From positions 5,022,001 to 5,086,000 of the forward strand of contig OZ004615.1 in assembly GCA_963924565.1 (NCBI GenBank): 64,000 nt of DNA, in the 5' to 3' direction. Positions 48,082 through 64,000 of the stretch are shown in pieces. The notes under the pieces are model-generated. The model was not told the DNA's origin, did not search any database, and saw only the letters and a list, made by a program, of their open reading frames with translations. Within the stretch, counting starts at the first letter, position 1; each line of letters starts with the position of its first letter. Both the position numbers and the translations under genes were made by a program. The stretch comes from Ascidiella aspersa. Taxonomy: Eukaryota.

Positions 48082-51000
48082 ATGCGACGTTGCGCCCAGC
48101 ACTTGTACTTCATCCTGCTGCTGCTTTACGTCGTCACGCTGGTCTGCTTCGACCGCAGGCTGTTTGAATGGACACAGTGGGCGCACAACTGGAAACGCAC
48201 CAGGGCAAATTTGCAGCGGCACCCTGAAGCAAGGGGCATGTTTAACTTTAATCGACCCCTCCACGAAAGGTGAGCGAAGCGGGAACACACAATAACACCT
48301 ATAAGTAGAGATGTCCAATAGTGTCGCATCAGAACCAATACCCGATCCCAAGTAATAGTATCGGTACTAGTCCGATATGAATAAGGACACACACACATAT
48401 CGTCACGCTCATAACCAAATTGTCTAAGTCATTTTTTACACATTTTCAAAGTTTTTGCTTCAGTCACTCCTTGTTACCACCCTCATCCATAGAAAAATGT
48501 TCAGCTCGTTCTTAGGTCATTTTCCATGCGCTTGTGCAAACAAATAACTTAGGCACTTTTCTATGGATCGAGATGGTAACAAGGGATGACTTAGGCAATT
48601 TGGTTAGGAGCGTGACGATATGTGTTTACTAGCAGCTGTGATCTGGCCCCTTTGGAACTTGTTTTTGACCAACGATTACCATAGTCCGATATTAGGTTGG
48701 TATCGCTGCCAATCCGATACCAAATTAACATAGAAACCTTAGCCATGATTTGGAGTTTACCGCAGTTATAACCACATTTTAATGTTATACTATCAAACAA
48801 TAGTACGTTAACAGCTAAACTCTCAATAGTAAGGCAATTTTGGTCTAATAACCCCGAATAAAGTGCATCTGAACGTTTCAATTTGATTTAATTTATCTGT
48901 TTAGGCCAGCGTTTCTCAACCGGTGCGCCATGGAAGGCTGCTAGGTGGGCCGCAAGCGTTAGTAAAAAACTTATCGAAATAAGTAAATTAATCGGAATAA
49001 GACTTTTATAGACAAAATAACGTTTTTAGTCTCAAAGGCTGGAAGTCCCTTTAAAGATATGCAACTATAAAACCCATATAATAAAAAATGCAGGCAATTT
49101 AAGAGAAATATTGGTACACCTCAAAAATTTCGCGCTCGCTTCACTCGCAAGGTGCGCCTTTATACGTTTCTAGGTGCGCCCCCAAGTATAAAAGGTTAAC
49201 AAACACTGGTTTAGGCATAGTAATGACGTCATTTGGCTTCGGATCGGGTCGCGATGTCCTAAAATATCAAACGACTTGTTGCAAATTGGATGATTGAGAT
49301 CAGGCCAAGTATAACATTAGAAACCATTTTTCTACTTGGCTCAATTTTAACTCACAAAACCCTTGAAATTGGCCAATTACAGTCGTTCAAACGCAAAATT
49401 AACGCACATTACTTATTTTCTTGAAAAAAACAAACGCCCCGTCTTTGCCGCAGTTCTTCGCCAGGCCAGTACACTCCCGTAATCTTGATGTGGCAACCTA
49501 TCTTCGGCTGGTTGACCAACCATGCGAATGAGTGTCCCGGATGTGTGATGACCTACGACCAGTCGACGGTGACCTTCGCCGACGCGGTGGTCTTCCATTG
49601 TGTCGAGATTACTGACGGTGTTGGCGGGCTGCCTCTCAGTCGAAGAAACACCTCGTCCAGGTGAACTGCACATGACTTTTTGCAGCTGGGCGAACTTGGC
49701 GCGCCGAGTTAGTTTTGGGGCAATATCTACGAAAGTTGTGCCGCTAACAAGCTGCAATTTTTTGTGCAGTCCTTGTATTGGCTTTAGCAATCCAGCAAAC
49801 ACACTTTTATCAAAATATATTATTATTTATTTTTATAAATATTAATATTCAGCCATTTTAATACCTAAATGTCGAGTTTTGTCGCTGATTTTTACGATAT
49901 AAACTACAAGGCATAGCCTTCAAAATGGTCAATATCAATTGGGCGAAAAAAAAATATTTACTTGAACGCAGTTCCGGAAGCAAGTCACCGGACGCCGCAT
50001 TTAGGAGCGTTTCGGTGTACTTTAACCACTGCTTTCTGCCTTATGCTTTTCGGGATATTCTTGAAATTGAAACGATTTTGATTAACTTTGTAACCGTATT
50101 TTAGTATTTTTGCTGCAACGGAACAGGGGTTACAGTAGGTTAGAACAGTCCGGCCCGGCGTTTCGTTAAAAGAATTGTTGCCGAAGTATGTTTGGTTTGC
50201 GTTGAGCTTAGATTTCCGTTTCTTGTTGGATTGGCCAAACTTTTGATACGTTCTTTTGATACGATTTTGATACGAACTGTGGACCAAAATTTTACCTTTA
50301 GTTTAATTCAACGCCAAAGTGTTGGTATTTTTTTGCAGTGTCTAAGGGTTTTGATTTTTTGAAGTTGTGATGTTAAGCTTGGAAGTTTTGCCGCCCTAAA
50401 CCACAGTTTGGTTATCTTTGTGACCCTATGGACTAACTTTTTTATTTATGTGCACTGAATCAGCTCTTTTCTACCAAAGAGTTTTTCAACATTTAAGAGG
50501 TAAAAACGCCGAATTAGTGACATCGCTTGCTTTCCAGATGGGTTTGGACATGCAAGGAACCGCCCTGGAACGTTCGGTATAGGTACGAAAAAACGCTGAC
50601 CCCTTTAAACGGGGTTTTCAACTGGACAATGACGTACAGAACGGACTCTGACGTGCTGGCCCCTTTCGCGTACGATTTTCCAACCATAACTAGGTAAGAA
50701 AATGTTCGCGGCGTGTTGAAAGAACACTGGGTTGCTGGAAACCTATTCGGGACATACAAAAATTCAGTTCACTAAATTTTGTTTTTCCTGCTTTGGGTTG
50801 TTGAAAATTTAAAGCTTATATCGTAACTACAAGACAACCAAGGTTTGTTTTGAGAAAAAAAAAATTGGAATAAAGATTACAACATTGTACGGATTGTTCT
50901 ACTTTTGTATTAAACATGCCGGGTCTTAGGTGGTCAGCAAAATTCTTTAAAAATAGTAACTAGAGTCAAAATGGGTAACCGACAACTCGACAAGTAATTG

Positions 51001-53958
51001 CGCGAAACTCGTTACTCGGGCGGTTTAAGAATTGGCATAATTTATTATTACTACTCACACCACATATGTCGCCCACAAGCAACGCATTCGTAAACACTGT
51101 CCCCTCTAATATTTCTCTTAAAACTAAAAAAATTCTTCTTGTATTGAGAATGAATATTTGCAGGCACGAAAAAAGCCTTCAGATATGATGTCATAAGTTA
51201 CGTCACAAAGTATTGTCAGTATTTGAGTAACTTAAGAAGCGTGTTCTAATTGATCAAAATTTTTCTGCTTAAATTAAGTTAAAAGCGCGAAGCTCGTTGT
51301 TGAAATTAGAGTTGACAAAACCGCTTTTCTTAAAAAAAAAAAACGTTTTCCTTAAAAAAAGATTCGACGCAAGGCTACTTAAAAAGAATAACACTATATT
51401 GACCCCACAGTGCGATCTATGCATCAAGAAAAGTTCACAATCTTAAGCGAAAAAAAAGCAAACATTACGTTAATCTTGTTTATAAAATAAATTGGTGTTA
51501 CTTACGATGAAATGCCCCCAATGCAACGACTTTAAAGATTTGCACAAACGCCTAGTTATATTTACCAAAAAAACAAAAAAAAAATTGCAAAAGTCCACTT
51601 TTGTGAGTATGATTCCACATAGCTTGTGGGTTTATGAAACAAAGAAAAAATATAATACAGCGCATTTAGGTTAAAACCATTGTTGTGAACTGTTTTAAAT
51701 GGAGTAAAGACACACGAAAAAAACTTCGCGCAAAATAGCTCAACTTAAGAACACTGCCCACAACTATTGAACACCAAACAACAGCAACCCGTTGTTTTCA
51801 ACGTCGAGCGCATTCGTAAAAATATTAACGTAAAACGATCATTTCAATACGTACAAAATAAACTCGGCACTTGCGCAGGGCGGAACTGCAGCGTGTCATC
51901 AAGGCCAAAGTGGCCAAGTCGCTCGGGGCTTGGGTCGTTTCAAACTGTGACGTGTCGGAACGCCAGAAACTGGTCGATGAGCTGCGAAAGTACATCAGCA
52001 TCGACGAGTTCGGGCAATGCGCCAATCGCCGTGTCGCTTCCGTCTGGAGCGTCGTTTCCAGGTATTCGTCCATAGCGCAGTGGTCTCCAACCCTTTTATT
52101 AACCGACTCCAATTTAAATAAATTGAAATGGTGTTTACACGCGACGCCAGTTTGTTTCCCGAAATAAGAGTCCGGTGTTGTAATTGCTTGAGTCAATGAC
52201 TTGACTTAAGTGCACTTAAGTCACTGTTTTGAAATGGCTTGACTTGACTTAAGTCTTTTGGGAAAATGACTTGACTTGACTTAAGTCTTTTGAACAAATG
52301 ACTTGGGTTATAATTAAGTGTTTTCATTAAGCATTTTTCGTAAAATTGGGTTATTTATCATAATTTTTGCACATAAAACAATTTGATTGCCCTCTTTTGC
52401 TTTTTGCTATTTTTTATTTAAGGTATTGCTCACGAACTAGTTTACCCAATTATAAAAGCTTAACGTGTAATTGTTTATAACAAGGACTTGACCTGGAATT
52501 GACTTGCTTCAATTATGAATTGACTAGGACTTGACTTGTCATTTGTTCAAAAAGACTTGACCTGGACTTAAGGTATTTTACAAATGACTTGACTTAGACT
52601 ACAGTTATTTTACAAATGACTTGACTAGGACTTGAGCCATTTTTAAATGACTTGTTTACAACACTAAGAACTAAATACCACGAGCGATTGATTTTAGGCT
52701 CAAATTGTACACAATTCCAGCCAACTGTGGCCCTACACATGTCTACCAAAATGGGAAGTTTCAATTAACACATGAATTTAAACTTACCCCATATGAATCA
52801 CAAAACTTTTAATTTACTTAAAATGTAATACACTGAGAAACTACTAAAACTTCAGAAATTGCTGAGTGATGGCGACGCAATTGAAGTTTTAGGCAACCCC
52901 GCATGAGGTCGCGACACACGGATTGGAGACCATTCATCTAGAGCGGTGGTTTCCAACCTTATTTGGCTTGCGGAACCCCTCAGAAACAATAAATACTTTG
53001 CGGCACCCCTACTAGAATTTCGTTTAATAATTCACTAAATGTCACAATAAACGAAACTGGAACATGAACTCAATGTTTTGATTTATTGTACTATAATCGT
53101 ACACGAAGAGTTGTAGGAGACTTACCAATTGAGCAGATATCACACTTGTTTAGATTTTCCAAATATCTTTCCCTGAGCATTATAATAGCTATATAAGTAG
53201 AAACTAGCAGCTTATAATGTTGTTAAAAATCTACTACAAGATCTACTTTGCGTTGGAGAACTTGCGGTGCAAGTAATGATTTGAACTTGTAACCTGGACG
53301 TCGCTTTTTCGGCAGATACAAGTTCTACTTCGCACTGGAAAACTCGCGCTGCAAGGATTACATCACCGAAAAGTTCTGGTACAACGGCCTCGGGGGCCAG
53401 GCGGTTCCGGTGGTCATGGGGCCGTCCCGGGCCGACTACGAGTTGGTGGCGCCGCCGCACTCGTTCGTGCACGTCGACGACTTCGCCAGCGCCCGCCAAC
53501 TCGCCGAGTACCTGATCAAACTCGACCAGGACGACGTCGCCTACTCAAAGTACCTCGAGTGGAGGCTGGACTCGGACTGGAAAGCGAAAAGGCTGAGCGC
53601 GATTCCGAAAGAGTCGTCTGCCTTTAGAAGATACGCTGAGGACCCGGGTAACTCCGGAGTTTGTGGACTTTGCTCCAAACTGCTAGACTCCGCGCGGAAC
53701 AACGCGACACCGCGCGTAGTGGACGACCTGGACCAGTGGTGGTTCGGACGGGGCTACACCAGCGCTATGACGCAATTCCCGATTTGTGACGTCAGGTCAG
53801 GCGTCAGCGGCTACTCAAATCACTGGATCGTGACGGCGAGCTACTCGGGTGGGTTTCTTCTGGTGGCCCTGCTGATCTTCTTCTTTCAGCGCTTCTACCA
53901 AAGCCCCTACTTCGCGCGTTTTTGTATCCGTCGGGGTAAACGCTGCCCCATCTTGTAA
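48082..53958 (+). CDS. Alpha-1,3-fucosyltransferase (GT10; FUT3-7/FUT9-like), FUT-A, ~458 aa, with an extra C-terminal TM helix and CaaX-like end
   Basis: Exons 48082-48269, 49454-49660, 50538-50693, 51879-52061 and 53316-53958 (1377 nt, all introns phase 2). N-terminal TM LYFILLLLYVVTLVCF; motifs ADAVVFH, FNWTMTYRTDSD, AWVVSNC, YKFYFALENSRCKDYITEKF, AVPVVMGP, SFVHVDDF. Confidence 0.9.
48393..48625. mobile_element. Fold-back MITE with 38-bp TIRs
   Basis: ACACATATCGTCACGCTCATAACCAAATTGTCTAAGTC versus its inverse at 48588-48625 (2 mismatches); additional inner palindrome. Confidence 0.8.
48907..49208. mobile_element. hAT/Charlie-like MITE
   Basis: CAGCGTTTCTCAACC / GGTTAACAAACACTG; exact 8-bp TSD GTTTAGGC. 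Confidence 0.8.
52173..52666. mobile_element. GACTT-rich TIR element (FUT-A intron 4)
   Basis: Ends GTGTTGTAA / TTACAACAC; many GACTTGACTT subrepeats; relatives at ~7537-8537, ~31680-31910, ~43440-44130 and ~59575-59675. Confidence 0.7.
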
Positions 53959-53960
53959 CC

Positions 53961-54073
53961 CTGGGCTGCGGAGTCGGTTAGAAATAAACCGAGTCCGACT
54001 CCCGAGTTCAGAGTCCTACTCCGGCCAAATCTGCGTTTTCGAGTCTCTATTCCGGCTCAGACTCCACAGCCTG
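53961..54073. mobile_element. CAGGGCTGCGGAGTCGG-family MITE directly after the FUT-A stop
   Basis: CTGGGCTGCGGAGTCGG ... ACTCCACAGCCTG, homologous to 55223-55323. Confidence 0.7.
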
Positions 54074-55222
54074 TATTTCGCCAATTTACGTAACTAAATA
54101 CAGTGGATATACTATAGCAACCCACTTATATAGGTGTTATATAATTAATCCACTCATTATACGTGGATGGAAAATATCCACCATATGCTATTTAACTTTT
54201 ACAATTTTATAGATTGACCTATCAGTTTCGAAAAGTTGGAACTGCGCTCGCCGGACTCGAGTTTTGGGCAATTTCACGTCGTTGTAGGAGTCCCGAGTTG
54301 CCCTTTCGGCACACATCATGTCGTCAATTATTACCTAGTATTGTTTTTTGTTATTTTGTCTGAAGGATGCTACGTATGTATAATTTACATCGGCTATAGC
54401 TAAAAGAAACAACTGACTTAAATAAGTTTTAGTTTTCAGATACCTCTGAATTTTTAACAGTTATTTTGCCACTTATATAGGTACTTAAAACTACTGTTGG
54501 GGGGTGGAAACAATGCGTGCATTTCGAAAAATATTCATCTTTTTCAGTTATGCCTTTCCTTACTAATGATTTGCCACTATATATTCACCGGAAGGTTTTC
54601 TATTAGCTGTTATCTTTTTATCAAAGACATACAAAGCCTGGACAATTCCGAGCCTTTCTTTATAGTGACCAATATTTATCTTGTTGTTTCTTTTCGAAAA
54701 TCACACTGTGTACGGTAGTTGTCTCCTTCCTTACTTAGTGATTCCGTTAAACTATTGCAAAAAAAACAACCTTGGCGCTGTTGCGAATATGTTTATAGAA
54801 GTTTAATCAATTTATTTATTTATTTTATACAACATATTGGGGTTGCATGCAAAGTTTCTAGGTTTTGTATGCAAAGTTTCCTTGTTTAATTTACAAGTAT
54901 ATTTATATTGCGTTACACCTGTCCACAAATATGCAATGTTTTTGTTAAATTACTTTGATATATATTTATTCTATAAAAGCCCTTTATGCCTTTTTTTGTG
55001 GAATATTAAGTTTGTAGAACGATTGCTTTTCGTCCTAATTGTTAAAGGAGTAAAGCCAGACAAACGACACTGTGTTACACTGTAGACAGAGGGTGACTTA
55101 TAAACACTGACAATCGTGCTAACGAGTTTTACCAAAGCTTCCACTTATCAACGAGAAGTAGAACAGTGCTACGAAGTATAACCTAACTGTGACCATATAC
55201 TCCAAACAAAAGTACCTCCAAG

Positions 55223-55323
55223 CAGGGCTGCGGAGTCGGACTCGGGACTCGGAAGTCGGACTCGGGTTTATTTTTTGGGCCCGAGTCGGACTCGGGTTAT
55301 TTTTAACCGACTCCGCAGCCCTG
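55223..55323. mobile_element. CAGGGCTGCGGAGTCGG-family MITE
   Basis: Perfect 17-bp TIR CAGGGCTGCGGAGTCGG; flanks CCTCCAAG/CCTCCAGC (degenerate TSD). Confidence 0.8.
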
Positions 55324-56672
55324 CCTCCAGCCTTTATAATAACCCCAAAAAAACTTTTCAAAATCAATTGACCTCTTTTCGAACTACATTGGTTAGAAAA
55401 CACTTTAAAAAGTGGTCTGAGTTTCTGGTAATATATAAAGAGACGAACCAACCCTAAAGGTCTCAGAAGCATAAAATTTTGAAATCTATTTATTGTAACC
55501 TTGGTTAAGCACGGCACGTCACATCATTTTACACGAGCAAGTAACAACTTTCACACAGAACACATAAGGCATAATAGTGTTCGGAAATGTATGGTGATGT
55601 ATTAAAACACAGTTCTTGCGTATATAGAGAGGTATAAATGCATAACTTTAAAGGATGGTGTTATGAGCGGCTATAACGTGACAAATAGTTGCATGGGATG
55701 TCCGCACCAGAACAATGATTCAAAGAAAGGGAAACTCTGTTCCTAAAGGTTTGCATAGTGCGTGTCATTTTTGTCAAACATAAAAGCACCGCCGTTGAAA
55801 TAGATAAATATTACTCAAAATACCAAAACCGAGACTAACAAACGTAATGCTTGACGAAAAACTTCAAATCGGCCCTATTTTTAATTAGACATATGGACGA
55901 AAATGTCTCTACTATGTAGATACTGACAGAGTGACAGTAGATGAAGAACAACTTTAAAGTAATAGAAAATTAAGATTTCGCAAAACTTGCACGAAAAACG
56001 TTACGACGTTATAGGACAAAGGTGTACGATTAGTATCAGGCATCATATTTTGACAGTTAGTACCGACTCAAAATCTTTACAGCATAGGCGATATACAAAG
56101 ACTAGATATCGGTTATCGGCCGATCCGACATTATCGGAAACCACACGTTGACGCCTATGTGTAAAGCTTTAAGACAGTTTTTGATGACAATAGCATCAAC
56201 TTATTTTTTACTGTCATTGGCTACCACCTGGTTTCAAATTTCAAAGGGAACCATTGCGGTCTTTATCTGCTAACGTTAATTAAAGCAAAATAAATACGAA
56301 TAATAGCGTTATAGCGCATAGCGCCAGACGCAGATTTTAGAATGTAGGGTGATTTATTGTGGCAAAGTAATTACGGCAGGCGAAACAATATTACACTTTA
56401 TAATTTTTTAATAAAATCCTCATGCACCTTAAATCGAAAAGGTGGAAATATCTATCTCGCTAGTGGATCAATGTTTATGTCCCTGCCTTCTATTTCCGTA
56501 CAACCCAAAGGTGGATACCTAACCTTCAGGGCGGATAAGGATGTTTACGCCCTATGTTAAACTGTCACAAATGGGGAGGAATTGTACGAATCCAGCCTGT
56601 GACCTGATAGCTGCTTTCGTACCACCTGGAAAGCATTCGCGTATATCCCAGTATAATTACATAATTAGTATT

Positions 56673-59600
56673 CTATGCTATGACGGTTTTCGTGTCGCAG
56701 GTCGAGAAGCACTGCTTCAAGAGCTTTAAACAGCAACAGCGGCACGTCACCGCAAGAACGGCCCCCCAAAAGAGGAGCGAGTAGGCGAGGGTGATGACCC
56801 ATCGAAGGGGGAAGCCACTCCGGGTGTCGCGCGCGCACAGGGGTATCTCGTTGCCCCCGGGGGAATACCCTGGGCCGAACCACCAGCTGTCCAAGTGCTC
56901 GACCGTCTTGACTGGGGCGCCTCGCCGCAATTCGTTGCAAAGGCCGCATACGCCAACCTTGTTCTTATTGTAAAGGCGACTGTTCAGCAGTCCTGTAGCC
57001 TTTGCTTGGCGCGCTTTGGCGATTTGCCTGCGTTTCCAGTCCGAGTCCAGCCTCCACTCGAGGTACTTTGAGTAGGCGGCGTCGTCCTGGTCGAGTTCGA
57101 TCAGGTAATCGGCGAGTTGGCGGGCGCTGGCGAAGTCGTCGACGTGCACGAACGAGTGCGGCGGCGCCACAAACTCGTAGTCGGCCCGGGACGGCCCCAT
57201 GACCACCGGAACCGCCTGGCTGGCGAGGCCGTTGCGCCAGAATTTTTCGGTGATGTAATCCTTGCACTGAGAGTTTTCCAGCGCGAAGTAGAACTTGTAT
57301 CTGGTGGAGTTTTTTATATATTTATAAGCTGCTAATATAAACGGATTTCTATCAAATGGATAATACTCGTAATTTTCATATCTCAATATGTTAGAATTCC
57401 CCTTTAAAGTACACCAGGCGCCTCTGAGATTCGAACTCTCGACCTCTACGATATAGCTATGGTTAGTTCCCGACCCGGTTCACCACAAAGATCGCGAACC
57501 TCAAATGTGCTTTCGATGCGTGTGCGATTGCATATCGCATATTATATGCACTTTGGTAATCAATATGGTTTTGGTGCCTATTGTAGGGTTTTGCATTTTG
57601 TCCGTTTTATGTTTGGATTTCATTCAATGGACGCATCGAGATAAATTGTGTGGCGATTGAAGGTTAAAAGATACAATTTGTAGAACATTAGTATTAAACT
57701 ATATGGGGCATAAGGGCCGGAGGATATTAAACTTTACCTTTTTAATTACTAGTATATTTGCAAGCGGTGTATTAAAGAAACATGAGGCACCATGAACCTA
57801 TAGGCCAGTGCTTCTTGAACATTTTTAGTTTTGATCACTCCTAGCATTATCTCCAAATTTCATTAACCCTTGTTTCATGATATGATAAACCTATCTCGTT
57901 TATATATAACAGCACAAAATGACTTAGGTTGTTTCGCAAGCTATCACCCATTTCTGACGGTTCACCCTTATTCACCCCTTCTGGTTGGTTCACCCCCGCA
58001 AAAATTTTATTCACCCTGGGGTGAACCATTTACCTGTTTAAGAAACACTATGGTGTGCCAGAATGGTTTGACTTACTGTGACAAGACTCTGGCCTGACAT
58101 GCCTTCTCCTTGCATAAGACTCTCTTCGAGCAGTGTCCAAACTCGTCTATGGTGATGTACTTTGATAGATTGGTGATCAGCTCTCGTCGCTTGGCCGCGT
58201 GGCAGTTGGATACCACCCAAACCCCAAGAGCGCTGGCGTTCTTTCTCCTTGTCCACTCCATGGCAGGCCTGAATATTTTGGTCACAAGTCAGTTTTCGGA
58301 GACCGTAGCGGGCAAACTTAAAGCAGAAGAAATGCTTATATTTTTCGGGTAGATGTCTACTTTTGAAACTCTTTACAAACCATAAAAGAATACTAGACTA
58401 TATTCAACGACAAATCCGTTTAACACAAAATAGACTCGGCTCAAACAAAACATGGATTTTTTTGTTTTTTTAAAGGGGTAAGTCAAAAACATTGCTAGAA
58501 GCAATGATAGATCCACGGTCGAATTGCATTGGCGAATTTTTTTTTTTTATCTTTTGTTGTTGATATTTTACTTGTCGTGAAACGCAACAAATGCTATTAG
58601 GAATTTATAGGAATAAAGTAATACTATACCTAGCGGAAGTAGCCACTTAATTAACAGATGATAGGCTTAGCTAAAAAGCTGATATTATGTGAAAAAATTT
58701 AAAAAGCTGATATTATGTGAAAAAAGTCTCTCAGTCAACATGTCCACATGTAGTGTTTGAATATGGAATTACCGCATCCATCTCTAAAACCGGAAAATAT
58801 GCCACTGATCTGCGTGTAAGTGATTTTTTATTTGATTTGATTGCTGCATACAATGTAGGCCTGCAACACCAGGATCATTTCACACGAGTGATTTGGTACA
58901 TTGTCCAGAAAAGTGGGTAAGAAAAGCTTTCAAATGAGTAAAAACTGTGGTTTACTTGCAAATATCGATCTTACGTATTATCTGGTTCCATATCGACCAT
59001 TTCGTAGGAGGCGAGTATGTCGGAATCCGTGCGGTAGGTCATGGTCCAGTTGAAGACCCCGTTGAGGGGTGTCAGGGTCTTTTGGAACACGTGGCGCACG
59101 TTCCAGGGGGGTTCCATACACATCCAAACCCACCTGAAAAAATGTGTATGCAATTTACTTGAACTAAATAGAAACAGTTCTAAAGAGAACCATTTGAAGT
59201 TAAAAGAGTACGTTGACTTGTCTTCACATGCTTAATAGTGGTCAGAGCTTTACATGGCAAAAAATAATCACGTTGAGGATATGAATCTGGCTATTTTATT
59301 GATATACCATTGGTTCCTAACGATCTATAGCTAATTGAAAAACTGTTGTCAATTAAGTGACTTGTTGATTTATTCACAATGAATCTTTACGGCACTGCAC
59401 AACTTCAGTGCCACAAACACTGGCCTCCTATGTTTATGTTTTGACACCCAATCCTTTGAATAAGATATTTTTAAGTGACTGGATTCAAAGTCTAGTAATT
59501 CTCCAAAACGACTTTCTTTCTGCGAAAAAAATATCGAATTGAAACAGTGGCCAACTCTTCTTAAGAATAGTGATTTATGTCATATCAAGTCATTTACCCA

Positions 59601-61025
59601 ACAGACTCAAGTCATTCGAAAACAGCGACTTAAGTGCCCTGAAGTAAAGTCATTGACTTAAGTAATTACAACCCAGGATTTAACAGTACTAAATAATCAC
59701 GGCGATCCTCACCCTATGCGTCTACCAGCAGTGTTGTCACTAAGTCAAGCCTTTCTGTTACAAACACCCACCTCTGCCACTCGCTCCTGTGCTGCCATGG
59801 CAACCAGCTCGGGTCGTCACGCATCTCTGCGCAGTGGAAAACGACGGCGTCGGCCCGGGACACGACGGACCGGTCGTAGGTTACCAGGCAACCGGGACAC
59901 ACGTGTTCGCTGTTGTAAACCTGACCGAAGAAGGGCATCCAGTAAAGGATCAGAAACCGCTTTGTTCCGTTTTCACTGAATAAGTTGATTAAGAAAAGTA
60001 AGAAAATTGCAGCTGCTTATTTTAGTGAATGTTTTTCACCCACCCATAAAACAGTGTATTTAAAATGTTGTTGGTCAAGTAAATGCCCCATCTTACCCCA
60101 TTAACCCTTAACCCCTGTTATCCAAAATAACAGTGTGTTGCAACTGGGTTAGGAGATTAATCCTTTAACCCCTGTATAACCCCCCCAAAATACCCCCAAA
60201 CATTAACCCCTGTATAACCAAAAAAAATTACACTTGCTTATTTTTAGTGAACGTTTTTGTTACTCACCGGCGTAGTGAGTTTCAACTGTGTTGGATACTG
60301 AGTTAAGTGATTACCCCATTATCCCCTATATAACCCCCATATATTTAAACCCACAGAACAATGTGTTGCAACGAAACAATGAACACCACAGGTATCTGCT
60401 GAAAGTTTACGTCTTTATTAAGGAGGCGACGATCCTAAACCTCGAGTACTCGGCCTTGGCAAGGGTGGCCTATGCTTTTTTCGAATAATGGCCATTTTAT
60501 CTGGTCACATCGAAAATAAATGGTACATTGATTAAGTTATGCAATCTGATTCCTTTTTGCATTGAATATATATTTGAAACTGACATTGATGTGTATGTGA
60601 GATTTAGGTTTCAAATTTCAAAAAATCATCGAACTTAAAGTTATCCTTTTAATGATTTCAGCAAAAATCACAAATCAGACGCTATTTTAGCAGACGTGGT
60701 TGACAATACAAAGTCTTCTGTCCCTAAAATGTTTTTGCATAAGTTTAAAAGCATTATATTAGAAAACCGTATGAAACGCAGCAAGAACAACCCAGAACAC
60801 ATTTCACCTTTCCAAGAGTCGCTGATCCAGGTTAAATAGCCTTTGTGAAGCCGGTGCCTTGCGTAGCTCACCGTTAGTCGTCACCCAGTTCAGCACGAAG
60901 ATCGTCGACTCGAAAAGGTACTTGTCGTAGTAGACAAACACCACGAAGTAGGAACAAACTAAAAAGACCAAAAGCAAGGAGTACCGTCGTCGTGGATTAA
61001 AGCCGGAGAAATAGTTGCTTTTCAT
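56673..61025 (-). CDS. Alpha-1,3-fucosyltransferase (GT10), FUT-B, ~466 aa, with an extra C-terminal TM helix and Cys-rich tail
   Basis: Minus-strand exons 61025-60808, 59975-59772, 59133-58975, 58268-58077 and 57300-56673 (1401 nt; intron positions and phases match FUT-A). N-terminal TM YSLLLVFLVCSYFVVFVYY; same GT10 motifs. Confidence 0.9.
57806..58050. mobile_element. hAT-like MITE in FUT-B intron 4
   Basis: CAGTGCTTCTTGAACA / TGTTTAAGAAACACTA ends; internal TTCACCC repeats. Confidence 0.55.
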
Positions 61026-62277: not shown

Positions 62278-64000
62278 AATCAATTGACCACTTTTCGAAC
62301 TACATTGGTTAGAAAACACTTTAAAAAGTGGTCTGAGTTTCTGGTAATATATAAAGAGACGAACCAACCCTAAAGGTCTCAGAAGCATAAAACTTTGAAA
62401 TCTATTTATTGTAACCTTAGTTAAGCACGGCACGTCACATCATTCTACACGAGCAAGTAACAACTTTCACACAGAACACATAAGGCATATAATGTTCGGA
62501 AATGTATAGTGATATATTAAAACACAGTTCTTGCGTATATAAAGAGGTATAAATGCATAACTTTAAAGGATGGTGTTATGAGCGGCTATAACGTGACAAA
62601 TAGTTGCATGGAATTTCCACGACCAAACAATGATTCGACGAAAGGCTTGTTAAAGATGAAAGCACCGTGGTTGAAATAGATAAATATTACTAAAAATACC
62701 AAACTGAGATTAACAAACTTAATGCTTGTAGAAAAACTTAGAATCGGCCCTAATTACTTTAAGTGGTAATTTAAATTGGACATATGGACGAAAACGTCTC
62801 TACTATGTAGATACCGACAGTAGCTGAAGACCAATTTCAAAGTAATAGAAAATTAAAACTTGAAAAAAACGTTACGGCAATATAGGACATAGGTGTATGA
62901 TTAATATCGCACCGCATTTTTTCACAGTTATACTTGACTCAAAATCTTTACATCTTTTCAAAATACTTGTAGCAGTTTAGAAACGAAATGCTACCAACGC
63001 TACTCTTGCATAGGCGATATACAACGACTATATCGGTTATCGGCCGATCCGACATTATCGAAACCACAATTTTGCGCCCATGTGTAAAGCTTTAAGACAG
63101 TTTTTGATAGCAATTGCATCAACTTATTTTTTACTGTCATTGGCTACCACCTGGTTTCAAATTTCAAAGGGAACCATTGCGGTCTTTATCTGCTAACGTT
63201 AATTAAAGCAAAATAAATACGAATAATAACGTTATAGCGCATAGCGCCAGCCGCAGATTTTAGAATGTAGGGTGATTTATTGTGGCAAAATAATTACGGC
63301 AGGCGAAACAATATTACACGTTATAATTTTTTAATAAAATCCTGATGCACTTTAAATCGAAAAGGTGGAAATATCTATCTCGCTAGTGGCTCAATTTTTA
63401 TGCCCTTCGGGTCTATTTTCCGTAAACAACCCAAAGGTGGGTATAACGTTTTAACCTTCAGGGCGGATAAGGATGTTTCCACCCTATGTTAAACTACCCC
63501 AAGGGGGGGGGGGGGGATTGTAAGAATCCAGCCTGTGAAGACCTGATAGCTGCTTTCGTACCACCTGGAAAGCATTCGCGTATATCCCAGTATGACTATA
63601 GAATACTAATTATGTAATTAATATTCTATGCTATGACGGTATTCGCGTCGCAGGTCGAGAGCAACTTCTCTAAGAGGTTCAACCACCCCAACTGGTCGTC
63701 TTACTTTTCGAACAGCAACAACGGCAAGTCACCGCCAGAACGGCCCCCAAAAAGAGGAGCGAGTAGGCGAGGGTGATGACCCATCGAAGGGGGAAGCCAC
63801 TCCGGGTGTGGCGTGCGCACAGGGGTATCTCGTCGCCCCCGGGGGAATACCCGGGGCCAAACCACCAGCTGTCCAAGTGTTCGACCGTCTTGACTGGGGC
63901 GCCTCGCCGCAGTTCGTTGCAAAGGCCGCATACGCCAACCTTGTTCTTATTGTAAAGGCGACTGTTCAGCAGGCCTGTAGCATTTGCTTGGCGCGCTTTG
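62278..64000. repeat. Segmental tandem duplication of ~55362-57020 (3' flank/UTR and last exon of FUT-B)
   Basis: Colinear and highly similar over ~1.7 kb, including non-coding sequence (TCAATTGACC...CGAACTACATTGGTTAGAAAACAC...). Confidence 0.93.
63679..64000 (-). CDS. Alpha-1,3-fucosyltransferase (GT10), FUT-C, 3' end only; the rest lies beyond the window
   Basis: ...VGVCGLCNELRRGAPVKTVEHLDSWWFGPGYSPGGDEIPLCARHTRSGFPLRWVITLAYSLLFLGAVLAVTCRCCCSKSKTTSWGG*, near-identical to the FUT-B last exon. Confidence 0.82.
   Translation of the reverse strand, partial: KARQANATGLLNSRLYNKNKVGVCGLCNELRRGAPVKTVEHLDSWWFGPGYSPGGDEIPLCARHTRSGFPLRWVITLAYSLLFLGAVLAVTCRCCCSKSKTTSWGG

What the first reader, a model, noticed from the sequence alone, without database searches (positions are those of the whole stretch)
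53760..53958. Fucosyltransferases apparently anchored at both ends: conserved extra C-terminal TM helix in all three GT10 paralogs
Seen: after the normal GT10 end (CGLC...LDxWWF) each paralog continues with a ~25-aa linker containing a conserved Cys (PIC/PLC). A ~20-aa hydrophobic segment follows (FUT-A WIVTASYSGGFLLVALLIFFF, 53824-53886; FUT-B/C WVITLAYSLLF[W/L]GAVLAVT), then a basic or Cys-rich tail. FUT-A and FUT-B also retain an N-terminal TM. Known: FUT3-7/9-type GT10 enzymes are type II single-pass Golgi proteins ending shortly after the WF motif. Inference: a two-anchor topology (both termini cytosolic, catalytic domain luminal or extracellular), comparable to CD39-type ectoenzymes. It would resist release by stem cleavage and might act at the cell surface or on membrane-proximal acceptors such as glycolipids. 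Its retention in divergent paralogs argues for function.
Basis: partly seen in the sequence, partly recalled or inferred. Interest (0 to 1): 0.82.

Follow-up and report, generated by a model that had tools for sequence, protein, structure and literature searches.

The report
Tunicate fucosyltransferases with two membrane anchors
In this probable sea-squirt genome, and in at least three named sea squirts, one subgroup of GT10 fucosyltransferases has a second predicted membrane-spanning helix at the tail end in addition to the usual one at the head; I found no paper describing this for the family, and so far it rests on sequence prediction only.

Summary
FUT-A (last exon 53316-53958, +), FUT-B (57300-56673, -) and FUT-C (63999-63679, -) all read on in frame past the GT10 end (CxxC...WWF). 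Each adds a 25-26 aa linker, a 20-21 aa uncharged helix and a 14-23 aa basic or Cys-rich tail.

Two further paralogs in the same genome do the same. All five also have an exon-1 hydrophobic anchor.

The module is not peculiar to this genome. It occurs in Clavelina, Phallusia and Styela proteins and about 14 unnamed public sequences. C, SG and Y in the linker are invariant in the 13 aligned members and W is nearly so. Catalytic-domain trees put the carriers in one clade.

Tails hold 97 K/R against 8 D/E across 22 members, which fits a cytosolic tail. The two-anchor reading (both ends cytosolic, catalytic domain in the lumen) is therefore the best-supported one. No experiment or transcript evidence was obtained.

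Five searches of the held papers found nothing describing a C-terminal TM in GT10.

A second GT10 subfamily in this genome also carries a C-terminal hydrophobic helix.

Verdict: a real, conserved, apparently undescribed variant of a known enzyme family, of moderate interest.

The parts
48082..48269 (+). FUT-A coding exon 1. Short basic N-tail, then a 16-aa hydrophobic segment (48103-48150), then a conserved juxtamembrane motif. GT donor at 48270.
49479..52065 (+). FUT-A middle coding exons, approximate bounds from tblastn: 49479-49661, 50533-50679 and 51886-52065. They encode the GT10 N-terminal domain and the start of the C-terminal domain.
53316..53745 (+). FUT-A last exon, catalytic part. 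AG acceptor at 53314-53315. Holds the FxLENSxCKDYITEKF donor motif and CxxC...WWF.
53746..53823 (+). FUT-A linker with C, SG and W residues conserved in the subfamily.
53824..53886 (+). FUT-A predicted C-terminal transmembrane helix, 21 uncharged residues.
53887..53958 (+). FUT-A basic tail (6 K/R, 0 D/E) and stop codon. AATAAA lies 25 nt downstream at 53983-53988.
60807..61025 (-). FUT-B coding exon 1. Basic N-tail (ends RRR) and a 19-aa hydrophobic segment (60983-60927). The 3' exon bound is approximate.
58076..59953 (-). FUT-B middle coding exons, approximate: 59953-59765, 59135-58977 and 58282-58076.
56877..57300 (-). FUT-B last exon, catalytic part. AG acceptor at 57302-57301.
56673..56876 (-). 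FUT-B extension: linker 56876-56802, predicted TM helix 56801-56742, Cys-cluster/basic tail 56741-56676, stop 56675-56673.
63679..64000 (-). FUT-C, 3' part of the last exon; the gene runs on beyond the window end into L031. Linker 63858-63784, TM 63783-63724, shortened tail 63723-63682. A 29-bp insertion relative to FUT-B follows the CCC codons.

Best explanation
The window holds three members of a tandem cluster of four GT10 alpha-1,3/4-fucosyltransferase genes. A fifth family member lies on another chromosome. They belong to a subfamily seen so far only in ascidian-like sequences.

In this subfamily the last exon encodes, in one frame with the catalytic domain, three added pieces:
- a conserved ordered linker, of the form WWFGxxY...C...SG...W..T..Y;
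- a roughly 20-residue transmembrane helix;
- a short cytosolic tail rich in Lys/Arg, usually with cysteines next to the membrane.

Proposed mechanism (inferred, not shown):
1. The N-terminal signal anchor inserts with its N-terminus in the cytosol, as in ordinary type II Golgi transferases.
2. The catalytic domain is translocated into the lumen.
3. The C-terminal helix acts as a stop-transfer anchor, leaving the basic tail in the cytosol. There its cysteines could be S-acylated.

The result is an enzyme tethered at both ends with both termini cytosolic, like the GlcNAc-1-phosphotransferase alpha/beta precursor or CD39-type NTPDases. Cleavage in or near the N-terminal anchor would then not release the catalytic domain. 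The cytosolic tail would also offer a second handle for sorting.
For: Shown by tools:
- GT10 identity: Pfam PF00852 and PF17039. The AF2 model of the full-length Phallusia ortholog (pLDDT 85.8) matches human FUT9 best, TM-score 0.84 on the target.
- The extension is in frame in all five own paralogs.
- Hydrophobic window means are 1.7-2.8 in most carriers.
- In the 13-sequence alignment the linker positions C161, S167, G168 and Y179 are invariant and W173 is nearly so.
- Of 10,142 GT10 hits in 1.84 billion representatives, only about 11 clusters match the profile through the extension.
- Named carriers are Clavelina lepadiformis, Phallusia mammillata and Styela clava.
- Full-length Clavelina and Phallusia proteins (448-473 aa) have both an N-terminal and a C-terminal hydrophobic segment.
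- A tree from the catalytic part alone groups the carriers (SH-aLRT 92). The constrained single-clade tree is better than the free tree (p-AU 0.82).
- Charges: tails 97 K/R against 8 D/E, linkers 69 against 50, first tail residue K/R in 19 of 22, juxtamembrane Cys in 16 of 22.
- AF2 predicts helix 413-447 in the Phallusia ortholog (block pLDDT 68-89, lowest over the last residues) after a confident linker (77-98), and helix 170-206 in FUT-B (80-91 over its core).
- The N-terminal uncharged run is 16-19 residues in the subfamily, the same as in other GT10 proteins (median 17, quartiles 15-19).
Against: - No TM predictor such as DeepTMHMM or Phobius, and no signal-peptide predictor, was available. 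Topology is argued only from hydrophobicity and charge.
- No transcript evidence: the RNA run gave depth of about 0.5 on the catalytic part of FUT-A and none over the TM segment. Only about 6% of that run was read.
- The tail beyond the membrane is poorly conserved. FUT-C lost most of it through a 29-bp insertion, and FUT-A and FUT-D differ there despite 95% identity overall.
- Some members have very short tails of 4-8 residues.
- The tools return no model coordinates, so I could not check whether the two helices can lie on the same side of the domain.
Confidence: 0.6

Rival explanations
1. Type I instead of two-anchor. The N-terminal hydrophobic segment is a cleaved signal peptide in this subfamily, so the mature enzyme is held only by the C-terminal helix. 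That would be an anchor swap, not an added anchor.
For: FUT-A, FUT-D and the chromosome-4 copy have only 16 uncharged N-terminal residues. The Clavelina proteins have a small-residue A-A-S motif at the end of the segment that would suit signal peptidase.
Against: Segment lengths of 16-19 equal those of ordinary type II GT10 proteins. FUT-B, FUT-C and Phallusia lack a small -3/-1 motif. A conserved motif follows the segment directly, and AF2 predicts a continuous helix 10-65 running from the segment into the stem. No signal-peptide predictor was run.
Confidence: 0.15
2. GPI signal. The C-terminal hydrophobic stretch is a GPI-attachment signal that is removed, with the conserved small-residue SG motif as the attachment site. 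The mature protein would then be TM plus GPI, like tetherin.
For: A conserved SG or SGxSG motif lies 5-10 residues upstream of the hydrophobic stretch. A few members have tails of only 4-8 residues.
Against: Most members have 9-24 residue tails with net charge +3 to +7, and K/R directly follows the helix in 19 of 22. By my own knowledge, GPI signals normally end with the hydrophobic stretch. Pro frequently sits between the two SG pairs. Cys clusters next to the membrane suggest cytosolic acylation of a retained tail.
Confidence: 0.08
3. Not membrane-spanning. The segment is an amphipathic or buried helix, giving peripheral association as in the Helicobacter pylori FucT C-terminus, or a dimerisation element.
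For: The segments contain G, S, T and Y residues. FUT-A's best window is only moderately hydrophobic. The GT10 precedent for C-terminal membrane association is peripheral (own knowledge).
Against: There are 15-26 consecutive uncharged residues, hydrophobicity means of 1.7-2.8, and a sharp switch to K/R at the end. The sequence varies while its hydrophobic character is kept, as expected for a lipid-facing helix.
Confidence: 0.07
4. Non-functional read-through or unexpressed copies. The extension would be an accident of the gene model or of decaying paralogs.
For: No RNA coverage of the segment was obtained. FUT-C carries a tail-truncating insertion. The Ciona models P0003 and P0008 stop in or before the linker.
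Against: Linker residues are invariant across species at 40-55% identity. The module is present in independently predicted proteins of three named ascidian species. The Phallusia entry has no genome contig on record, which fits an mRNA-derived sequence. All five own copies have open frames.
Confidence: 0.05

Closest known systems
Vertebrate Lewis-type GT10 enzymes (FUT3-7, FUT9; human FUT9 structure 8d0w)
   Same: Same family and fold: PF17039 plus PF00852, the donor-binding FxxFENSxxxxYxTEK motif and the C-terminal CxxC...W[WF] motif. FUT9 is the best structural match. N-terminal signal anchor and luminal catalytic domain.
   Different: Vertebrate hits end 1-4 residues after the W[WF] motif and are single-pass type II proteins. 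The tunicate subfamily adds about 60-75 residues: linker, TM helix and cytosolic tail.
Helicobacter pylori alpha-1,3/4-fucosyltransferase (GT10; structures 2nzw, 2nzx)
   Same: A GT10 enzyme whose membrane association lies at the C-terminus (own knowledge). The catalytic fold is related (E 4e-10).
   Different: By my own knowledge, the bacterial enzyme has no N-terminal anchor. It uses heptad repeats plus basic amphipathic helices for peripheral binding, not a membrane-spanning helix. There is no sequence similarity in the tail.
GlcNAc-1-phosphotransferase alpha/beta precursor (GNPTAB) and CD39-type NTPDases
   Same: A secretory-pathway enzyme with one TM at each end, both tails cytosolic and a luminal catalytic part. 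GNPTAB is described as a type III membrane protein with two TM domains and sorting motifs in both cytosolic tails (PMC4498157). The CD39 topology is from my own knowledge.
   Different: Unrelated folds and families. This is an analogy of topology only. GNPTAB is cleaved into two separately anchored subunits, and nothing suggests that here.
Tetherin (BST-2/CD317)
   Same: A doubly anchored type II protein with an N-terminal TM plus a C-terminal lipid anchor (PMC3828773 abstract).
   Different: Its second anchor is GPI and the protein is not an enzyme. The basic tails seen here argue against GPI.

Membership tests
GT10 alpha-1,3/4-fucosyltransferase (Pfam Glyco_transf_10) | C-terminal domain profile PF00852 above the curated cut-off | tested here: met
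   FUT-A last exon 141.9 bits and FUT-B 152.1 bits, against a cut-off of 23.9. FUT-C and FUT-D matched in the own-genome scan.
GT10 alpha-1,3/4-fucosyltransferase (Pfam Glyco_transf_10) | N-terminal domain PF17039 with the conserved Glu of the E-S/P-P motif | tested here: met
   FUT-B exon 2 scores 41.5 bits against a cut-off of 28.7. The E-P-P-W-N motif is present in exon 3 of FUT-A and FUT-B.
GT10 alpha-1,3/4-fucosyltransferase (Pfam Glyco_transf_10) | Donor-binding motif FxxFENSxxxxYxTEK and C-terminal CxxC | tested here: met
   Both are present in all five paralogs. K19, Y21, E24 and K25 are invariant in alignment A1.
GT10 alpha-1,3/4-fucosyltransferase (Pfam Glyco_transf_10) | GT-B fold like solved GT10 structures | tested here: met
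   Tested on the Phallusia ortholog P0088, not on the window's spliced protein: FUT9 8d0w, E 2.6e-21, TM-score 0.84.
GT10 alpha-1,3/4-fucosyltransferase (Pfam Glyco_transf_10) | Fucosyl transfer from GDP-fucose, linkage and acceptor | not testable with these tools
   Needs an enzyme assay.
Canonical type II single-pass Golgi glycosyltransferase architecture | Only one hydrophobic segment, at the N-terminus | tested here: not met
   A second segment of 15-26 uncharged residues lies near the C-terminus in all five paralogs and 17 relatives.
Two-anchor (type III-like, CD39/GNPTAB-like) topology | Hydrophobic segments at both ends, with positive charge on the outer (cytosolic) flank of each | tested here: met
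   N-flanks hold RR or RRR. C-tails hold 97 K/R against 8 D/E. Full-length orthologs show both segments.
Two-anchor (type III-like, CD39/GNPTAB-like) topology | Both termini cytosolic and the N-terminal segment uncleaved in the mature protein | not testable with these tools
   Needs tagging and protease protection. Indirect support only: the N-terminal segment length equals that of ordinary GT10 anchors.
GPI-anchored protein | Hydrophobic stretch at the very C-terminus without a charged tail, preceded by small residues at the attachment site | tested here: not met
   Basic tails of 9-24 residues in most members. The small-residue SG motif is present but often has Pro after it. No GPI predictor was available.

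The most novel reading that the evidence does not exclude
Tunicates have repeatedly or anciently converted Golgi GT10 fucosyltransferases into doubly anchored, acylated membrane enzymes. Two GT10 subfamilies in this genome carry C-terminal TM helices. This would make them resistant to the protease-driven shedding that tunes glycosylation in vertebrates, or would place them in a different compartment, possibly the cell surface or tunic-forming epidermis. It would amount to a lineage-specific rule of Golgi enzyme retention.
Probability: 0.15. Interest if true: 0.75.

Novelty: new variant of a known kind. Interest (0 to 1): 0.55.

Why it matters
Golgi glycosyltransferases are textbook type II single-pass proteins. 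Their release by cleavage in or near the single anchor, for example by SPPL3 (PMC8918473, PMC9722940), is a known way of regulating cellular glycosylation.

A conserved clade with a second anchor and a cytosolic, probably acylated tail would be a natural experiment on three questions:
- what the single-anchor design is for;
- how retention and shedding work;
- whether holding the catalytic domain close to the membrane changes acceptor choice.

It also matters for annotation. Homology-guided gene models can cut the extension off, as the truncated Ciona models suggest.

Tried and rejected
- **Word search on the extension.** Using the Styela protein, residues 190-301, it found only the query itself. 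The extension is too divergent for shared 5-mers.
- **ESM Atlas look-up** of the FUT-B extension: no usable hit.
- **RNA evidence.** One RNA run of the same species label was laid on 51800-57400. About 6% of the run was read. Depth was about 0.5 on 53296-53669 and zero over both TM segments, with no splice joints. This is inconclusive, not negative. Runs X1 and X2 cover introns as well and look like DNA. X3 (kind unknown) has short contigs on the conserved catalytic parts only.
- **AF2 on the FUT-B last exon alone** gave a poor model (pLDDT 64). Only its terminal helix is usable.
- **dN/dS per region** between paralogs was too noisy or saturated for the 19-32 codon segments. It shows only that the tail is unconstrained and that the catalytic part is oddly similar at silent sites.
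- **Common origin of the two C-TM subfamilies:** not rejected but not supported (p-AU 0.33).
- **Spliced proteins.** Exons were analysed one by one, and full-length statements rest on the orthologs P0087 and P0088.
- **CaaX-like end of FUT-A (C-P-I-L):** considered and not adopted. It is absent from FUT-D and from all relatives.
Full report
**What is in the window**

Positions 48082-53958 (+) hold a five-exon GT10 gene, FUT-A. Positions 61025-56673 (-) hold a second, FUT-B. From 63679 to the window end lies the 3' part of a third, FUT-C (-). The last-exon translations of FUT-A and FUT-B match Pfam Glyco_transf_10 at E 2e-41 and 2e-44, and upstream exons match the N-terminal GT10 domain.

The window is G000:C9:5022001-5086000 of a 308.6 Mb assembly. 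The best protein hits are Ciona, Styela, Clavelina and Phallusia, so the organism is probably an ascidian. The cluster continues outside the window with the rest of FUT-C and a fourth gene, FUT-D (L031, L049). A fifth family member lies on contig C4 (L035, L051).

In each gene the frame runs on past CxxC...WWF within the same exon. It encodes 25-26 linker residues, 20-21 uncharged residues and a 14-23 residue tail.

- The best 19-residue Kyte-Doolittle means are 2.0-2.3.
- All five genes also have an exon-1 hydrophobic segment of 16-19 residues, preceded by Arg residues and followed by a conserved [YF]-D-x-x-L-F-E motif.
- The three window genes represent two lineages. FUT-B and FUT-C are about 98% identical, and FUT-A and FUT-D are 95% identical. 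The A/D and B/C pairs share about 55% in the last exon.

**It is a conserved module, not a local accident**

The word search with the FUT-B last exon returned 86 GT10 proteins. The ten closest with a complete C-terminus all carry the same extension. The two Ciona models stop in or before the linker.

Aligning 13 members gave invariant residues inside the extension (G148, Y151, C161, S167, G168, Y179) and a nearly invariant W173. The helix itself keeps its hydrophobic character but not its sequence.

A profile of that alignment, scored against 1.84 billion representatives, found 10,142 GT10 proteins. Only about 11 clusters aligned through the extension. The named ones are:
- several tandem Clavelina lepadiformis proteins (449-473 aa);
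- a Phallusia mammillata protein (448 aa, no genome contig on record);
- the Styela clava protein.

The full-length Clavelina and Phallusia proteins have one hydrophobic window at each end.

Of 239 fetched GT10 proteins, 27 have a window of mean 1.6 or more in the last 75 residues. Twenty-five of these carry the linker motif. The other two are a low-quality amphioxus model and a truncated fragment. Vertebrate hits end 1-4 residues after the motif.

A tree made from the catalytic part alone, with the extension excluded, groups the carriers (SH-aLRT 92) with the truncated Ciona models nested inside. Holding all 25 together gives a better likelihood than the free search (p-AU 0.82). The five genes of this genome form one starred clade, so they are lineage-specific duplicates. 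The cross-species conservation is therefore the real argument for function.

**Topology**

Across 22 members the tails hold 97 K/R against 8 D/E, while the linkers hold 69 against 50. The residue right after the uncharged run is K or R in 19 of 22. Sixteen of 22 have Cys within a few residues of that boundary. This is the positive-inside pattern expected if the tail is cytosolic, and juxtamembrane Cys clusters are typical S-acylation sites (established knowledge; not tested here).

The N-terminal uncharged run (16-19 residues) matches that of other GT10 proteins (median 17, quartiles 15-19). There is therefore no sign that the anchor has become a short cleavable signal peptide.

AlphaFold2 on the Phallusia ortholog with a 105-sequence alignment gave pLDDT 85.8 and three relevant features:
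- an N-terminal helix 10-65;
- a confident linker (block means 77-98);
- a terminal helix 413-447 (block means 68-89).

Its best PDB match is human FUT9 (TM-score 0.84 on the target). The FUT-B last exon folded alone gave a poor model, but it has a terminal helix 170-206 with pLDDT 80-91 over its core. Coordinates are not returned, so helix packing could not be examined.

**Most likely mechanism**

This part is inferred. The protein inserts as a type II protein through its N-terminal anchor. The catalytic domain is translocated into the lumen. The C-terminal helix then acts as a stop-transfer anchor, leaving a short basic, acylatable tail in the cytosol.

The conserved Cys of the linker aligns in position with the C-terminal Cys that ends many other GT10 proteins of this genome, which follow the pattern W-x(6-9)-C-x(2-4)-stop. 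The added part therefore begins after it.

Known doubly anchored secretory-pathway enzymes are the GlcNAc-1-phosphotransferase precursor (PMC4498157) and CD39-type NTPDases (own knowledge). A second anchor would keep the catalytic domain membrane-bound after SPPL3-type cleavage, which releases many type II Golgi enzymes (PMC8918473, PMC9722940). This consequence is speculative.

**What weakens the case**

- There is no transcript support. The RNA run gave almost no reads on these genes.
- The distal tail is not conserved. FUT-C has a 29-bp insertion just after the Cys cluster that brings in an early stop. FUT-A and FUT-D tails differ strongly.
- No dedicated TM, signal-peptide or GPI predictor was available.

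**Novelty**

Five searches of the held papers found no description of a C-terminal TM in GT10, nor of ascidian GT10 architecture. The proteins exist in public databases as automatic 'FUT7-like' or 'FUT3-like' predictions. I therefore rate this a new variant of a known kind.

A second GT10 subfamily in this genome (contig C2, L027 and L041) and four unnamed relatives also end in a hydrophobic helix followed by a basic tail, after a different and longer linker. A shared origin with the main subfamily is neither supported nor rejected (p-AU 0.33).

Noticed in passing
L027:1264-1977 (-) and L041:1414-2229 (+), i.e. G000:C2 about 27.477-27.490 Mb; relatives P0240-P0243: A second, different GT10 subfamily also ends with a C-terminal hydrophobic helix plus basic tail, after a linker of about 45 aa. 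L027's best window mean is 2.79. L041 is borderline at 1.44. Four unnamed public relatives show the same by eye. Neighbouring loci L040, L042, L043 and L045 look like broken copies with in-frame stops.
   Followed up: partly
window 63682-63723 versus 56676-56741 (-): FUT-C carries a 29-bp insertion directly after the CCC codons relative to FUT-B. This shifts the frame and shortens the cytosolic tail from 22 to 14 residues. The downstream DNA still aligns with FUT-B's old tail.
   Followed up: yes
window 53316-53958 versus L049:2577-3197 (-): Silent-site divergence between FUT-A and FUT-D is low in the catalytic part (dS about 0.16) but saturated in the TM and tail. A/B shows the same pattern. 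This suggests gene conversion that homogenises the catalytic part only. Counts are small.
   Followed up: partly
whole genome G000: Large GT10 expansion: 63 exon-level PF00852 matches, about 40 separate last-exon frames, many in tandem arrays on C2, C3, C4, C6, C7 and C9. Several have in-frame stops.
   Followed up: partly
window 53929-53955 (+): FUT-A ends with a polybasic stretch followed by C-P-I-L, a CaaX-like box. It is absent from the 95%-identical FUT-D and from all relatives, so it is probably chance. It overlaps the sibling note s1-792951.
   Followed up: partly
P0003 (Ciona savignyi) and P0008 (Ciona intestinalis): The public Ciona models nest inside the C-TM clade but stop within or just before the linker. 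These are likely truncated gene models rather than true loss. The Ciona genomes could not be searched here.
   Followed up: no
window 52174-52734, 54044-54230 and 55166-55352: Very high-copy repeats (word depth 1e4-2.6e5 in the DNA-like runs) lie in the FUT-A intron and in the intergenic space. The few RNA reads that were laid fall mostly on these.
   Followed up: no
L012 (G000:C6:9724489-9725007, -): This GT10 copy has an extra C-terminal segment of about 28 aa, partly hydrophobic with an Arg inside. Its near-identical neighbour L013 ends shortly after the terminal Cys instead. This may be a recent extension of the reading frame.
   Followed up: no
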